Shown here: positions 59,947-63,714 of the stretch, piece after piece
Layout of the letters: each line of letters opens with the position of its first letter
Numbering within the stretch: position 1 is the stretch's first letter
DNA from: Salpingoeca rosetta
Lineage: Eukaryota; Protista; Choanoflagellata
NCBI GenBank assembly: GCA_033442325.1
Contig: JAWQFM010000006.1
Coordinates: forward strand, 377,628 to 441,627
DNA length: 64,000 bases
Direction of reading: 5' to 3'
Position numbers and translations under genes: made by a program
The notes under the pieces: generated by a model
What the model saw: the letters and a program-made list of their open reading frames with translations, nothing else
The model's database searches: none
What the model was told of the DNA's origin: nothing

Positions 59947-60228
59947 TCACTGCGCAAATCCGCTCTCCACAACTTGTATTCCAAATGGCGCTGATGATGA
60001 TGACGATGATGGTGGTGGTGGTTTGTCCGCTGCTGCGTCCTCACCACTCGCAACCACAACAATGCCAAACGGCCCAGCGTCACCACCGCCATCGTCGCTG
60101 CTGTCATGTGTTGCAGCGTGATCGTGGCTGCGGGCAGTTGAGGAGACACCAAGCTGCTGCTGCTGCTGCTGCTGTCGACTCGGAATCGGGCAGCACAGGT
60201 TGTAGTGCGACCCTACACCAAATTGTGT

Positions 60229-60295
<67 letters not shown>

Positions 60296-61617
60296 TGTGT
60301 GTGTGGGTGTGTGTGTGTGGGTGTGTGTGTGGGTGTGTGTGTGTGTGTGGGTGTGTGTGAGCCCACAGCCATCACACAGCATCGCCAACAGTGTCAAGAG
60401 TTCCATGTCCATCCAGCACATGCCGTGCGCGCCTACAGCACCTGCTTCAAATGAGGACAGCGGGCGCCAGCTGAGCCACCGCTTCTTGAAGAGATGAGAG
60501 AGAGCGGCATCGACACATGTACACATGCGCCGCTCGTCCTCCTCGCCGCGGATGAAGTGCGGATCCTGTTACAGTCGCCAGATTGGAACAGCGTCAGAGC
60601 CAAAAGCACGATGCGTGGTGTGTGTGTGTGTGTGTGGTGGTGTGTGTGTGTGTGTGGTGGTGTGTGTGTGTGTCTGTCTGTGTGTGTGTGTGTGTGTTTG
60701 TGTGTGTGTCTGTGTGGCTGGCGTGTGTGTCTGTGGGTGTGGGTGTGTGTGTGGGTGTGTCTGTGGGTGGGTGAATGACTGCGCGCTGGCACGTTCATCA
60801 ACTGCGCGTGCGCACCATGATCAAGAGTCGGGTGTCCTGCATGACGTCATCGCCGCTCTCCACACCGAGGATTGCACGTGACATGTTGTCCCGTGTGCCA
60901 CCTGTTTGATACGGCATTGATGATGGCGGTGGCGGTGGTGATGGTGATGGGGATGGCAAGGGCTAGCACGCACAACATGTACAGCACGCACACACGTGCA
61001 CACAACACACACACACAGTATGCACACACGCGCACACAACACACACACAGTATGCACACACGCGCGCACCACGCTCCTCTCTCCCAAAAACGTGTTTGGT
61101 TGTGTGTGGACTCACCACACATGATGGGGGATCCCACGTGCTGGAAGTGGTGCTCCAGCTTGTCGATAAATGCTTGCGACCACGCTTCCTTCCCAGACGG
61201 CAGCTCGATGATCCGAAAGTCCACCTACAGTAAAACAAGGGGGATGGTGAGCAAGTGAGCGAAGGGGTGGGCAAAGCCGCACGGCACGTGTGCGTGTGTA
61301 CAGGCGCGTTTGTGTGAAGCTGAAAGAACACAGCCTCAAGGCTAAACACAGCAGCAGCAACGACACGGCCCCAGCAGCTTCTCCGCGCCCCAGGCACTCG
61401 CACCGTCTCTGTTGTCCACAACTCACGTCACACCAGGCCTGGAGTACACGGCCTGCCTCGACTGTTCCAATCCACTCTCGCGACCCTCGAAACGCCGGTG
61501 GCTTCTCCCCTTCGCTCACGAGCGTGTCTTGAATTTGAGGGATAGTTGGCGGCGTCCTGTCAACGTGCGGGACGTGTCACATAGCGTGAAGTGAAGGCTG
61601 CGTTGTGAGAACTGCAC

Positions 61618-61689
<72 letters not shown>

Positions 61690-62346
61690 CGTGTGTGTGT
61701 GTGTGTGTGTGTGCGTTGTTTGTGATGAGGGTGAGGCGAGAAAGGGGATGGCGCTTACAGACCGACCTTTGGCAATGCCCTTGAATGTTCAACCAGGACA
61801 CCAAGCTCTGCAGCGTCCGGTATCCACAGCCCCAGCCCTACAATTGCACACACAACATGGCAAAAGTGAGAGATGGGCTTGGTGCACGTGCGGGGCAGGG
61901 AGCGTTCATGCATGCTATCGCACGGATGCATACACACATGCACACAATCAAACGGATGCATACACATGCACACAATCAAACGGATGCATACACATGTACA
62001 TACATGCACACGCACACACACATGCACACACACATGCACACATAAATGCACACACACGCACGCACATGCACACGCACACACACACATGCACATGCACAAA
62101 CACGCACATGTTCCCACATTCGCACATGCTCACCGCGTCACGGGTGTCGTCGATGTGATAGTGCCAGTAGTCCACGGCACCTTGGAAGCCAACAAAGTTG
62201 CCATCCCCGCCACTGCCATTCAAGCGCCCGCTGGCCCGCCGCAACTGCTCTGCCGTCACCCGCAACAACAACCGCGGCGCTGCCTGGGACTGCTGCGCTG
62301 CTGTTGCACCATCATCACCACCAGCATCCCGCGCCTCCATCGTCAT
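59947..62346 (-). CDS. UFSP1: UFM1-specific protease 1 (peptidase C78), 7 exons
   Basis: DYWHY..D.RDA|GWGCGYRTLQSL (catalytic Cys codon 61826-61828), EKPPAFRGSREWIGTVE, SPIMCGGTRDNMSRAILGV, LIM|DPHF and HYNLCCP. It lacks the long UFSP2 N-terminal domain. Confidence 0.9.
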
Positions 62347-62454: not shown

Positions 62455-63714
62455 ATGCTTGTTGACACAATAATGCGAGGGGCCGGCGTTTTGGTGGTGG
62501 TGGTGGTGGTGATGGTGGTGGTGCTTGCACACAGCAGCATGAGTGAGGTGGTGCTGGTGGAAGATCAGCGTGGTGGGTTCCACATCAACACCAGCGATCC
62601 ATTGAATGAACCCGTGTTTGTGAATGGGATGGACGTTGGTCAAGTGGGCAACGAGGTGTTGGCGCTGCGCAGCATGGTGTCAACACAGATGAGCATGCTG
62701 GAAGCGCAGCAGAGCAGGCTTGAGGAGCAAGAACGTCTCACATGCTTCCTCACTGCCACGGACACCACCTCCATGGCCTACGTTGGCACCGGCAACAATG
62801 ACTGGATTGGCGGCGTTTTGGCCAACACTGGACTCATCTATGGCATTCCACATCGCTCAACCTCCGTGCTAATCATCGACCCTGCCACCAACACCGCTGA
62901 CACCACCACGATCACAGGCCTGGAAACAGGAGGTGACAAGTGGGGCGGTGGTGTACTGACTGACAACGGCCTCATCTACGGTTTTCCGCACACTGCGGTG
63001 TCTGTGCTCATCGTTGACCCACACACGAACACCATCGACAACACCACCCTCGATGGACTGCCATCTGACGGGGGCAAATGGATCAGCGGCGTGGCTGCCG
63101 ACAATGGCCTCATCTTCGGCGTGCCCTGGAGTTCTTCTTCTGTCCTCATCATCGACCCAGCAGCCAACACCACAGACACCACCACCATCGCTGGGCTTGA
63201 AGGAGATGAGAAGTGGTACGGTGGCGTGCAAGCCAGCAATAACCTCATCTACTGCATTCCAGTCAACGCTGAGACTGTGCTCATCATCGACCCATCCACC
63301 ACCACGTCAGACACCACAACAATCGCTGGCCTGACAGGCAATGGCGCGTGGTATGGCGGCGTGCTTGCTGGCAACGGCCTCATCTATGGCATCCCATACA
63401 AATCTACGGCCGTGCTCATCATCGATTCAGCAACCAACAGTGCCGACACAACGTCCATTTCCGGTCTTGCAAGCAACTACTACAAGTGGAGCGGCGGTGT
63501 GCTGGCGCCCAACGGCCGCATCATCGGCATCCCACGTGATGCTGCATCCGCACTCATCATCGACCCAACCACCAACACCGTCCACACCACGTCGTTGCCT
63601 GTTCCAACTGGAGCCCGCAAGTGGTTTGATGGCGTTCTCGCCAGCAACGGCCTCATCTATGGTTTGCCATGGAGCGCAGCACACAGTGTCCTCATCATCG
63701 ATCCTGGCTGCTGA
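62455..63714 (+). CDS. Intronless secreted protein: signal peptide, short beta cap, coiled coil and 7 repeats of about 45 aa (probable 7-bladed beta-propeller)
   Basis: 419-aa single-exon ORF. Repeat consensus W-x-GGVLA-x-NGLIYGIP-x4-SVLIIDP-x-TNT-x-DTT-x-I-x-GL occurs 7 times. The ATG at 62473 is an alternative start. Confidence 0.85.
   Translation: MLVDTIMRGAGVLVVVVVVMVVVLAHSSMSEVVLVEDQRGGFHINTSDPLNEPVFVNGMDVGQVGNEVLALRSMVSTQMSMLEAQQSRLEEQERLTCFLTATDTTSMAYVGTGNNDWIGGVLANTGLIYGIPHRSTSVLIIDPATNTADTTTITGLETGGDKWGGGVLTDNGLIYGFPHTAVSVLIVDPHTNTIDNTTLDGLPSDGGKWISGVAADNGLIFGVPWSSSSVLIIDPAANTTDTTTIAGLEGDEKWYGGVQASNNLIYCIPVNAETVLIIDPSTTTSDTTTIAGLTGNGAWYGGVLAGNGLIYGIPYKSTAVLIIDSATNSADTTSISGLASNYYKWSGGVLAPNGRIIGIPRDAASALIIDPTTNTVHTTSLPVPTGARKWFDGVLASNGLIYGLPWSAAHSVLIIDPGC

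What the first reader, a model, noticed from the sequence alone, without database searches (positions are those of the whole stretch)
59947..60075. UFSP1 carries a C-terminal tail with two UBA5/C53-like UFM1- or ATG8-interacting motifs
Seen: after the usual terminal YNLCCP there is an extra disordered tail of about 80 aa with the repeats DAGPFGIVVVASGE and SAPFGIQVVESGF. Known, from memory: UBA5 binds UFM1 and GABARAP through EWGIELVSE, CDK5RAP3/C53 has similar [WF]G-hydrophobic motifs, and animal UFSP1 ends near the YNL motif. Inference: an avidity module for poly-UFM1 chains, or an ATG8-recruited deUFMylase, which would be a novel UFMylation-autophagy link.
Basis: partly seen in the sequence, partly recalled or inferred. 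Interest (0 to 1): 0.75.

Follow-up and report, generated by a model that had tools for sequence, protein, structure and literature searches.

The report
UFM1 protease with UFM1-binding-like tail
The UFM1-specific protease UFSP1 of the choanoflagellate Salpingoeca rosetta carries a real, evolutionarily conserved C-terminal tail. Its short repeats look like the peptide that the UFM1-activating enzyme UBA5 uses to hold UFM1, so the protease may use a second grip on its substrate that animal UFSP1 has lost.

Summary
A 7-exon minus-strand gene (62346..59947) encodes a 332-aa Peptidase_C78 protease. It is identical to public protein PTSG_00954 of Salpingoeca rosetta. After YNLCCP comes a 79-aa disordered tail with two repeats, PFGIVVVASG and PFGIQVVESG.

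The tail is not lineage noise:
- Choanoflagellate orthologues (Barroeca, Acanthoeca, Choanoeca) and two unnamed sequences end in the same motif, psi-x-psi-V-x-x-G-[FYH], in 1-3 copies.
- UFSP1-type genes of an unidentified GC-rich marine eukaryote group end in DW..LIEVVxEG or WKIEVVDQG.
- More than 100 animal UFSP1s stop 4-22 residues after YNLC.
- The two S. rosetta copies share 8 residues, 7 of them with different codons.

The genome's own UBA5 has FGICLV at the position of the human UFM1-binding WGIELV. The coding pattern FGIx[LV]V occurs only 43 times in the 55-Mb genome. Three of those sites lie in UBA5 and this tail.

A co-fold of the tail with UFM1 gave weak support only (0.45; best control 0.00). 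I read the tail as a UFIM/LIR-type beta-strand motif, analogous to the C-terminal LIR tail of ATG4B. Binding is not shown, and ATG8 or SUMO remain possible partners. No RNA reads could be obtained.

The parts
62134..62346 (-). Exon 1 of UFSP1 (PTSG_00954): start codon and the N-terminal extension of about 50 residues, up to ..HYHIDDTRDA
   Evidence: ATG at 62346 and GT donor after 62134. Identical to residues 1-71 of P0001.
61767..61837 (-). Exon 2: Cys box GWGCGYRT with the catalytic Cys75
   Evidence: Pfam Peptidase_C78, E 5.7e-07. C75 is nearly invariant in 110 homologues.
61427..61556 (-). Exon 3: core of the C78 domain (..IQDTLV..SREWIGT..)
   Evidence: Pfam Peptidase_C78, E 1.3e-09.
61116..61224 (-). 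Exon 4
   Evidence: AG acceptor and GT donor, in frame. Part of P0001.
60816..60901 (-). Exon 5
   Evidence: AG acceptor and GT donor, in frame. Part of P0001.
60442..60565 (-). Exon 6: begins with the His box DPH (Asp204, His206)
   Evidence: D204, P205 and H206 are nearly invariant in 110 homologues. Aligns to UfSP1 and UfSP2 structures.
59947..60212 (-). Exon 7: SHYNLCCP, then the 79-residue tail and the stop codon (59947-59949)
   Evidence: AG acceptor at 60213-60214, phase 1. 100% identical to P0001 residues 246-332.
59950..60186 (-). Disordered C-terminal tail, residues 254-332
   Evidence: AlphaFold2 pLDDT is below 50 for residues 275-332 and the tail does not dock on the domain. The tail is absent from animal UFSP1.
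60037..60078 (-). Repeat 1: AGPFGIVVVASGED (residues 290-303)
   Evidence: Matches the UBA5 G-I-x-[LV]-V core. FGIV also fits the canonical LIR core.
59953..59994 (-). Repeat 2: SAPFGIQVVESGFA (residues 318-331), one residue from the C-terminus. This copy is conserved in position across orthologues.
   Evidence: Eight residues are shared with repeat 1, seven of them through different codons.

Best explanation
The tail is a genuine, translated, selectively maintained C-terminal short linear motif of non-animal UFSP1 proteases. Its core is psi-x-psi-V-x-x-G, usually preceded by F or W. In choanoflagellates it is followed by an aromatic residue and D/A-G at the chain end. I propose that it works as a UFM1-interacting motif (UFIM). 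An extended strand would pair with beta-2 of UFM1 and place positions 1 and 3 (Ile295/Val297 in repeat 1, Ile323/Val325 in repeat 2) in the hydrophobic cleft that takes Ile343/Leu345 of UBA5 and Phe196/Val198 of UFBP1. That cleft lies on the face of UFM1 opposite its C-terminus. The catalytic domain could therefore hold the UFM1 C-terminal tail while the flexible tail clamps the same UFM1, or a neighbouring one. This would raise affinity for pro-UFM1 or UFM1 conjugates, as the C-terminal LIR tail of ATG4B does for LC3. Shown here: the gene model, the motif, its conservation in two lineages and loss in animals, its identity in pattern with the organism's own UBA5 site, and the disorder of the tail. 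Inferred: binding, the partner, the bipartite mechanism, and any effect on catalysis.
For: 1. Gene and frame: seven GT-AG exons join in frame and are identical to public protein PTSG_00954. Peptidase_C78 and the catalytic residues are present.
2. Conservation among choanoflagellates: Barroeca monosierra ..FEITETGYDG, Acanthoeca spectabilis ..FAIVVESAGFAGE, Choanoeca flexa ..IFELVAQGHDA, a Logan transcript with three copies (GIVVESEGH, FGGIQIVSSGYDG, FGGIQVVEEGYG), and a JGI metagenome gene ..GIVCVASGFDG. These align without gaps.
3. A second lineage: UFSP1-type ORFs on marine contigs of 59-69% GC end in DWSSLIEVVGEG, EDWKIEVVDQG, WESLFEVVDVG plus DWASQIEIVDAG, or DWGALIETVSEG. All keep the same I-x-V-V-x-x-G spacing.
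4. Loss in animals: more than 100 animal UFSP1s end 4-22 residues after YNLC without the motif.
5. Purifying selection: the two S. rosetta copies share 8 residues, 7 of them encoded by different codons.
6. Own-genome comparison: S. rosetta UBA5 (identified at E 5.8e-15 against human UBA5) reads VVHEETFGICLVDES in its next exon, where human UBA5 has IIHEDNEWGIELVSE. The coding pattern for FGIx[LV]V occurs 43 times in 55 Mb (control 16). Two sites are in this tail and one is in UBA5. I found no comparable disordered-tail context among the other sites: those I could place sit in apparently non-coding sequence, in folded domains, or behind a signal peptide, and one (C28:832 kb) was left unresolved.
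7. Literature: Ile343 and Leu345 of UBA5 are the residues needed for UFM1 binding, and the site lies opposite the UFM1 C-terminus (PMC5428781). The UFBP1 UFIM is FVVEE, with Phe196/Val198 equivalent to Ile343/Leu345 (PMC9772183); compare IVVES in Acanthoeca and in the Logan sequence. The ATG4B C-terminal tail adds at least 1000-fold affinity for LC3B (PMC9631991).
8. Co-fold of tail residues 281-332 with UFM1 residues 1-86: score 0.45, best of 3 controls 0.00, at least 96% of contacts shared between runs, partner pLDDT at least 55. The verdict was 'weak support'. At 0.60 or under, only 5 of 78 solved complexes passed, and so did all 4 mismatches that passed.
9. The tail is disordered and does not dock on its own domain in the monomer model.
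Against: - No binding measurement exists. The only co-fold is in the weak band and was untested on peptides or disordered chains. It may also echo solved UBA5-UFM1 complexes.
- The motif pattern was defined after seeing the sequences.
- The His336 equivalent of UBA5, which is needed for full UFM1 binding, has no fixed counterpart in the tails.
- The upstream aromatic residue is not at a fixed distance and is missing in one orthologue.
- The best-conserved part in choanoflagellates, G-[FYH]-[DA]-G at the very C-terminus, has no counterpart in UBA5 or UFBP1. It hints at a different or additional partner.
- The same core also satisfies SIM and, in about half the copies, canonical LIR patterns.
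- The taxon of the second lineage is unknown, so common descent versus convergence is open.
- There is no transcript evidence from S. rosetta itself.
Confidence: 0.5

Rival explanations
1. The motif is an ATG8-interacting motif (LIR/AIM), alone or as a dual LIR/UFIM like that of UBA5. It would bring the deUFMylase to ATG8-decorated membranes or to ER-phagy sites rather than, or besides, gripping UFM1.
For: The UBA5 motif it copies binds GABARAP about ten times more tightly than UFM1 (PMC7916544, PMC8304084). Several copies fit [WFY]-x-x-[LIV] with acidic or Ser residues upstream: S. rosetta FGIV, Acanthoeca FAIV, Choanoeca FELV, and FGGI twice in the Logan sequence. The marine group has WSSL, WGSL, WESL and WGAL directly before IEVV. 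S. rosetta has an ATG8 gene. ATG4B, from a related protease family, ends in a LIR (PMC9631991, PMC11864561).
Against: The positionally conserved terminal copy of S. rosetta (FGIQ), the Barroeca copy (FEIT) and the JGI copy (no aromatic) fail the canonical core. No ATG8 co-fold or binding test was run. The enzyme's substrate is UFM1, not ATG8.
Confidence: 0.2
2. The motif is a SUMO-interacting motif ([VI]-x-[VI]-[VI] with acidic or Ser flank), or a beta-strand motif for some other partner such as another UFMylation factor. The conserved terminal G-aromatic-D/A-G would be the specificity element.
For: IVVV, IQVV and IEVV followed by E, S or D fit the classical SIM pattern (established knowledge). 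The G-[FYH]-[DA]-G end is conserved in choanoflagellates and has no match in known UFIMs.
Against: SIMs do not need the upstream F or W that most copies keep. Nothing links UFSP1 to SUMO. The exact hexapeptide pattern is shared with the organism's own UBA5 UFM1 site. Controls with unrelated proteins scored 0.00, while UFM1 scored 0.45.
Confidence: 0.15
3. The strand acts within the enzyme. It would pack against the catalytic domain of the same or a second UFSP1 molecule, giving autoinhibition or dimerisation, rather than binding a ubiquitin-like protein.
For: C-terminal strands often act in cis. Position at the chain end is conserved.
Against: The AlphaFold2 monomer model, built with a 110-sequence alignment, leaves residues 275-332 at pLDDT below 50 with no docking. 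Copy number varies from 1 to 3, which is unusual for a structural strand.
Confidence: 0.08
4. The tail is functionless low-complexity extension, and the resemblance to UBA5 is chance.
For: The tail is rich in Q, S, P, G and A runs. phmmer with the last exon against 1.84 billion representatives found only the protein itself and one spurious hit.
Against: The motif is kept at the C-terminus in at least five further choanoflagellate-type sequences and in a second lineage, while the rest of the tail is unalignable. Seven of 8 shared residues in the two copies use different codons. About 1 in 1000 shuffled tails show the pattern.
Confidence: 0.05

Closest known systems
UBA5 LIR/UFIM (UFM1-interacting sequence; human residues 334-348, ..HEDNEWGIELVSE..)
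   Same: The core aromatic-G-I-x-[LV]-V is the same, with hydrophobic residues at i and i+2 in a disordered acidic segment. S. rosetta UBA5 itself reads FGICLV, against FGIVVV and FGIQVV in the tail. Ile343 and Leu345 are the binding residues (PMC5428781).
   Different: The host protein is the protease, not the E1. The motif sits at the extreme C-terminus and occurs in 1-3 copies. It has no fixed His336 equivalent. It carries an extra conserved G-[FYH]-[DA]-G. Binding is untested.
UFBP1/DDRGK1 UFIM (FVVEE, residues 194-202; PDB 7W3N)
   Same: It is a psi-V-V-E-[ES] strand that pairs with beta-2 of UFM1. Acanthoeca and the Logan sequence read IVVES. There is no need for the Trp (PMC9772183).
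   Different: In UFBP1 the motif lies inside a structured region of an E3 component. Here it is a free C-terminal tail of the deconjugating enzyme.
ATG4B C-terminal LIR tail
   Same: It is a papain-like protease specific for a ubiquitin-like protein, with a flexible C-terminal tail ending in a motif that binds the ubiquitin-like core. This gives bipartite substrate recognition (PMC9631991, PMC11864561). Weak Pfam cross-hits link C78 and C54.
   Different: The protease family (C54) and the substrate (ATG8/LC3) differ. This is an analogy of mechanism, not membership.
C53/CDK5RAP3 shuffled AIMs (IDWG/D)
   Same: These are short aromatic-Gly motifs in a disordered region of a UFMylation factor that bind both ATG8 and UFM1 (PMC10183829). 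The marine-group tails contain D-W-G.
   Different: The order of hydrophobic and aromatic residues differs. The choanoflagellate copies do not fit IDWG.
Animal UFSP1 (mouse UfSP1, PDB 2Z84)
   Same: The single-domain Peptidase_C78 architecture and the catalytic residues are the same. E 4.5e-32.
   Different: Animal proteins end 4-22 residues after YNLC and have no such motif.

Membership tests
Peptidase_C78 (UFM1-specific proteases) | Sequence match to the family profile over its curated cut-off | tested here: met
   Exon 2 scores 29.8 bits and exon 3 scores 38.3 bits against a cut-off of 29.1. The whole protein carries PF07910 in the precomputed list. E 1e-32 to 1e-34 to the UfSP1 and UfSP2 structures.
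Peptidase_C78 (UFM1-specific proteases) | Catalytic Cys box (GWGC) and Asp-Pro-His box | tested here: met
   C75, D204, P205 and H206 are present and nearly invariant among 110 homologues.
UFSP1 type (as opposed to UFSP2) | Single catalytic domain without the UfSP2 N-terminal domain, and nearest relatives named UFSP1 | tested here: met
   The protein has 332 aa and only PF07910. The best named hits are animal Ufm1-specific protease 1. A second, longer C78 gene lies on contig 17.
UFIM (UBA5/UFBP1-type UFM1-interacting motif) | Two hydrophobic residues at i and i+2 on an extended strand (Ile343/Leu345 in UBA5; Phe196/Val198 in UFBP1) | tested here: met
   I295/V297 and I323/V325 in S. rosetta. 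The same positions are hydrophobic in all nine choanoflagellate-type copies, except a Cys in the JGI copy, and in the marine group.
UFIM (UBA5/UFBP1-type UFM1-interacting motif) | Location in a disordered, accessible segment | tested here: met
   pLDDT is below 50 for residues 275-332.
UFIM (UBA5/UFBP1-type UFM1-interacting motif) | UBA5-type accessory residues: Trp341 two residues before Ile343, and His336 | tested here: inconclusive
   F293 and F321 sit at the Trp position in S. rosetta. In orthologues the aromatic shifts or is absent. No His is found at a fixed distance.
UFIM (UBA5/UFBP1-type UFM1-interacting motif) | Physical binding to the beta-2 groove of UFM1 | tested here: inconclusive
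   Co-fold score 0.45 against a best control of 0.00, verdict 'weak support', and no interface was reported.
Canonical LIR/AIM | [WFY]-x-x-[LIV] core with acidic, Ser or Thr residues upstream | tested here: inconclusive
   Repeat 1 (FGIV) fits. The terminal repeat 2 (FGIQ) does not. About half of the orthologue copies fit.
Canonical LIR/AIM | Binding to ATG8 | not tested
SUMO-interacting motif | [VI]-x-[VI]-[VI] or psi-psi-x-psi with an acidic or Ser flank | tested here: met
   IVVV-ASGED and IQVV-ESG fit by inspection. The pattern is short and common, so the match has little weight.
SUMO-interacting motif | Binding to SUMO | not tested
   No test was run.

The most novel reading that the evidence does not exclude
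The tail is an ancient dual UFM1/ATG8-binding module of UFSP1 that was present before choanoflagellates and a distant marine eukaryote lineage diverged, and was lost on the animal stem. It would couple deUFMylation to substrate-bound UFM1 and to ATG8 membranes, as a direct protease-level link between UFMylation and autophagy. Copy number (1-3) would tune avidity for multi-UFM1 targets.
Probability: 0.15. Interest if true: 0.8.

Novelty: new variant of a known kind. Interest (0 to 1): 0.62.

Why it matters
UFM1-interacting motifs have been described in the E1 (UBA5), in an E3 component (UFBP1) and in a few other proteins. None of the UFMylation papers I searched describes one in a UFM1 protease.

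A conserved C-terminal UFIM/LIR-like tail on UFSP1 would have three consequences:
- It would suggest that substrate capture by the deconjugating enzyme is bipartite, as in ATG4B.
- It would offer a reason why UFSP1 and UFSP2 differ in targeting.
- It would point to a feature lost in animals, so work on mammalian UFSP1 would have missed it.

The idea is cheaply testable with peptides, truncations and point mutants. S. rosetta can also be handled genetically.

Tried and rejected
- phmmer of the last exon against 1.84 billion representatives found only the protein itself and a repeat-rich bacterial protein of no relevance. The tail is too short and too variable for whole-tail homology. The motif was found only by reading the C-termini of domain homologues.
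- An 11-column profile of the motif, searched in the own genome, returned only repeat 2 itself (E 0.24). The first-look filter passed one candidate, so this is uninformative.
- phmmer of the tail and of the UBA5 UFIM exon against PDB sequences gave no hits. The queries are too short.
A 4-sequence alignment worked.
- Other FGIx[LV]V sites. A Ser-rich FGIGLVSEG on contig 20 follows a signal peptide, so it is a secreted protein and was rejected as a cytosolic motif. DEFGIEVV on contig 28 lies in a 32-codon open stretch with no clear coding context and was left unresolved.
- The taxon of the GC-rich marine group could not be named. The protein atlas and cluster look-ups gave no organism.
- The C-terminus of S. 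rosetta UFSP2 was not located in the fetched loci.
- Co-fold. The verdict was 'weak support', and it is reported as such rather than as evidence of binding.
- Joined sequences. I joined the exons only inside local scripts, to check frame and phase. No typed joined sequence was sent to any search or folding tool. Searches used single exons by reference or the public protein id P0001. The UFM1 gene of this genome is split into at least four exons and was not joined. A database protein (P0130) identical to those exons over residues 1-86 was used instead.

Full report
**What is there.**

The finding lies in the last exon of a minus-strand gene. Reading the minus strand from 62400 to 59900, I placed seven exons with canonical GT-AG borders:
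- 62346-62134
- 61837-61767
- 61556-61427
- 61224-61116
- 60901-60816
- 60565-60442
- 60212-59947

They join in frame to 332 codons and a stop (the join was done only in a local script to check phase). Exons 2 and 3 match Pfam Peptidase_C78 over its cut-off.

A phmmer search with the last exon alone, by reference, returned a 332-aa protein that is 100% identical over residues 246-332. It is PTSG_00954 of Salpingoeca rosetta, 'hypothetical protein' in NCBI and 'UFSP1/2/DUB catalytic domain-containing' in UniRef. Its sequence equals my model.

The window's genome has 55.4 Mb in 68 contigs. It holds a second, longer C78 gene on contig 17, a UFM1 gene on contig 12 and an ATG8 gene on contig 8.

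The protein aligns to mouse UfSP1 (2Z84, E 4.5e-32) and to the UfSP2 catalytic domain (3OQC, E 9.9e-34). It keeps Cys75 and Asp204-Pro-His206. It has only the catalytic domain, and its best named relatives are animal UFSP1s. I therefore file it as UFSP1-type.

**The observation.**

After YNLCCP (residues 248-253) come 79 more residues ending in a stop at 59947-59949. AGPFGIVVVASGED is encoded at 60078-60037 and SAPFGIQVVESGFA at 59994-59953. An AlphaFold2 model built on 110 homologues gives a confident catalytic domain. Residues 275-332 stay below pLDDT 50 and are not docked.

**Is the tail real and selected?**

The argument is therefore comparative.

I listed what follows the YNLC motif in about 120 homologues from a profile search. 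More than 100 animal UFSP1s end 4-22 residues later with no common motif. The choanoflagellate-type sequences all have longer tails that end alike:

| Source | C-terminal motif |
|---|---|
| Barroeca monosierra | ..HFEITETGYDG |
| Acanthoeca spectabilis | ..SFAIVVESAGFAGE |
| Choanoeca flexa (long isoform) | ..SIFELVAQGHDA |
| Transcript-like Logan contig (SRR31189393), three copies | GIVVESEGH, FGGIQIVSSGYDG, FGGIQVVEEGYG |
| JGI metagenome gene | ..GQGIVCVASGFDG |

The nine copies align without gaps as psi-x-psi-[VTE]-x-x-G-[FYH]. The rest of the tails cannot be aligned. Shuffling each tail gives the pattern in the last 16 residues about once in 1000 trials; the pattern was defined post hoc.

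Within S. rosetta the two copies share eight residues, seven of which use different codons. The duplication is therefore old and the peptide, not the DNA, has been kept.

One other reading frame of the last exon is also open. Only the frame fixed by the splice phase continues from the conserved YNLCCPIP into the conserved terminal motif.

**A second lineage.**

A scan of metagenome contigs with a four-sequence alignment gave many animal-like genes with short ends. It also gave a group of intron-less, single-domain UFSP1-type ORFs on marine contigs of 59-69% GC. Their tails end as follows:
- ..CDATDWSSLIEVVGEGET
- ..NGEDWKIEVVDQGVEYR
- ..GGWESLFEVVDVG.. plus ..PPDWASQIEIVDAGLKG (two copies)
- ..PSDWGALIETVSEGNGRLK

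One of these proteins stands for a 90%-identity cluster of 98 members and was itself seen on 53 contigs, always with the motif. The spacing I-x-V-V-x-x-G is the same as in choanoflagellates. WKIEVV has exactly the W-x-I-E-[LV]-V register of human UBA5. I could not name the organism, so whether this is shared ancestry or convergence is open.

**Why UFM1 is the likeliest partner.**

*Literature.* In human UBA5 the UFM1-interacting sequence binds the face of UFM1 opposite its C-terminus. Ile343 sits in a cleft formed by Leu21, Val23, Val32 and Phe35, and Leu345 sits on Leu21 and Phe35. Alanine at either residue diminishes binding (PMC5428781). The UFBP1 UFIM is FVVEE, a strand that pairs with beta-2 of UFM1, with Phe196/Val198 equivalent to Ile343/Leu345 and no Trp needed (PMC9772183).

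*Own genome.* I located S. rosetta UBA5 on contig 1 through ThiF hits and the SGHIQ motif. One exon matches human UBA5 residues 216-274 at E 5.8e-15. The next exon reads ..VVHEETFGICLVDES.., at the place of human IIHEDNEWGIELVSE. The last exon ends in a UFC1-binding-like ..DLDLDELQKQLGSLN. The organism's own UFM1-binding site is thus F-G-I-x-L-V, and the UFSP1 tail carries F-G-I-x-V-V twice.

*Rarity of the pattern.* A degenerate DNA pattern for FGIx[LV]V matches only 43 sites in the whole genome, in any frame, against 16 for the reversed control. Two sites are in this tail and one is in UBA5. Translating the other 40 sites showed apparently non-coding context, positions inside folded domains (a RAD51-like and a kinase-like segment), or a secreted protein. 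One short open stretch on contig 28 was left unresolved.

*Binding surface.* The UFM1 residues that form the cleft are kept in the S. rosetta UFM1 exons, with Phe35 replaced by Tyr. This rests on comparing with the human numbering given in PMC5428781.

I used database protein P0130, which is identical to those exons over residues 1-86. Folded with tail residues 281-332 it scored 0.45 (three runs: 0.44-0.46). The best of three controls scored 0.00, at least 96% of contacts were shared between runs, and the partner pLDDT was at least 55. The tool's verdict is 'weak support'. At 0.60 or under, only 5 of 78 solved complexes reached the mark, and so did all 4 mismatches that passed. Peptides and disordered chains were not in the calibration. 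I count this as a small positive, not as evidence of binding.

**Mechanism proposed.**

The UFIM site is on the side of UFM1 away from its C-terminus. A flexible tail could therefore bind the same UFM1 whose C-terminal tail sits in the active site, or a second UFM1 nearby.

The closest working analogy is ATG4B. Its C-terminal tail with a terminal LIR is needed for binding and cleavage of LC3B but not of a short peptide substrate, and it adds at least 1000-fold affinity (PMC9631991; see also PMC11864561).

Two or three copies occur in S. rosetta, in the Logan sequence and in one marine sequence. Most orthologues have one copy. Multivalency for poly-UFM1 is therefore a lineage option, not the conserved function.

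**What does not fit.**

- The most constant part in choanoflagellates is the end G-[FYH]-[DA]-G. It has no counterpart in UBA5 or UFBP1.
- The upstream aromatic moves or is missing in some copies.
- There is no His336 equivalent.
- The same core meets the classical SIM pattern.
- About half of the copies, and most of the marine ones (W-x-x-L directly before IEVV), meet the canonical LIR core. The UBA5 motif itself binds GABARAP more tightly than UFM1 (PMC7916544, PMC8304084).

ATG8, SUMO or a further partner therefore remain possible. An in-cis role is disfavoured by the undocked tail in the monomer model.

**Novelty.**

Full-text searches for UFSP1 together with UFIM, 'UFM1-interacting motif' or 'C-terminal tail' gave reviews and E1/E3 papers only. 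None describes such a motif in a UFM1 protease. The evolutionary study of the pathway that I searched does not mention UFSP1 or choanoflagellates. Earlier notes of this scan hold nothing on it.

I rate it a new variant of a known kind: a known class of ubiquitin-like-binding strand motif in a new host, the deconjugating enzyme. It is conserved outside animals and lost in them.

**Limits.**

- No transcript evidence from S. rosetta.
- No binding data.
- Only one co-fold, and only with UFM1.
- The motif was defined after the fact.
- The homologue search is limited by word sharing and length windows, so the census of lineages is incomplete.

Noticed in passing
G000:C1:567000-572400 (L028); motif at C1:570146-570162 (-): S. 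rosetta UBA5 has Phe instead of Trp in its UFM1/ATG8-binding site (VVHEETFGICLVDES). It ends in a UFC1-binding-like DLDLDELQKQLGSLN. A run of N (withheld sequence or a gap) lies about 2 kb downstream in the same locus.
   Followed up: partly
L006 (G000:C12:146908-150006), minus strand: UFM1 is split into at least four short exons separated by (CA)n-rich introns, and the genomic reading ends ..RVGGVCC. EukProt protein P0130 is identical over residues 1-86 but ends ..RVGGELEHTHKE. This may be another species or an alternative 3' end, and the pro-peptide removed by the protease would differ.
   Followed up: no
window 60213-60441, 60566-60815 and 61557-61766 (introns 6, 5 and 2 of the gene): These three introns of this gene consist largely of long (CA)n / (CACACCC)n microsatellites. 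The same holds for introns of UFM1, UBA5 and UFSP2 in the fetched loci.
   Followed up: no
window 62455-63714 (+): An intron-less ORF of 419 aa lies head-to-head with UFSP1. It has a hydrophobic N-terminus and about seven repeats of the type ..GGVLA.NGLIYGIP....VLIIDP.TNT.. (propeller-like). The scan has already noted it as a separate finding (s1-445030).
   Followed up: no
G000:C17:605702-609866 (L001, L004, L005): This is the second Peptidase_C78 gene, which is UFSP2-like. I did not find its last exon, so I do not know whether it carries a comparable tail.
   Followed up: partly
G000:C20:86224-86240 (-) (L056, L071): A Ser-rich ..SSSSSNNKFGIGLVSEGNS.. lies just after a signal-peptide-like start (MLCCLWLVVLVFVSSNGAHA) of a gene with glycoside-hydrolase-like exons downstream. 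It looks like the UBA5 motif but sits in a secreted protein.
   Followed up: partly
L088-L091, L093, L097, L120 (marine metagenome contigs): These contigs of 59-69% GC carry intron-less UFSP1-type genes with W-x-x-L-I-E-V-V tails and come from an abundant, unnamed marine picoeukaryote group. One protein was seen on 53 contigs.
   Followed up: partly
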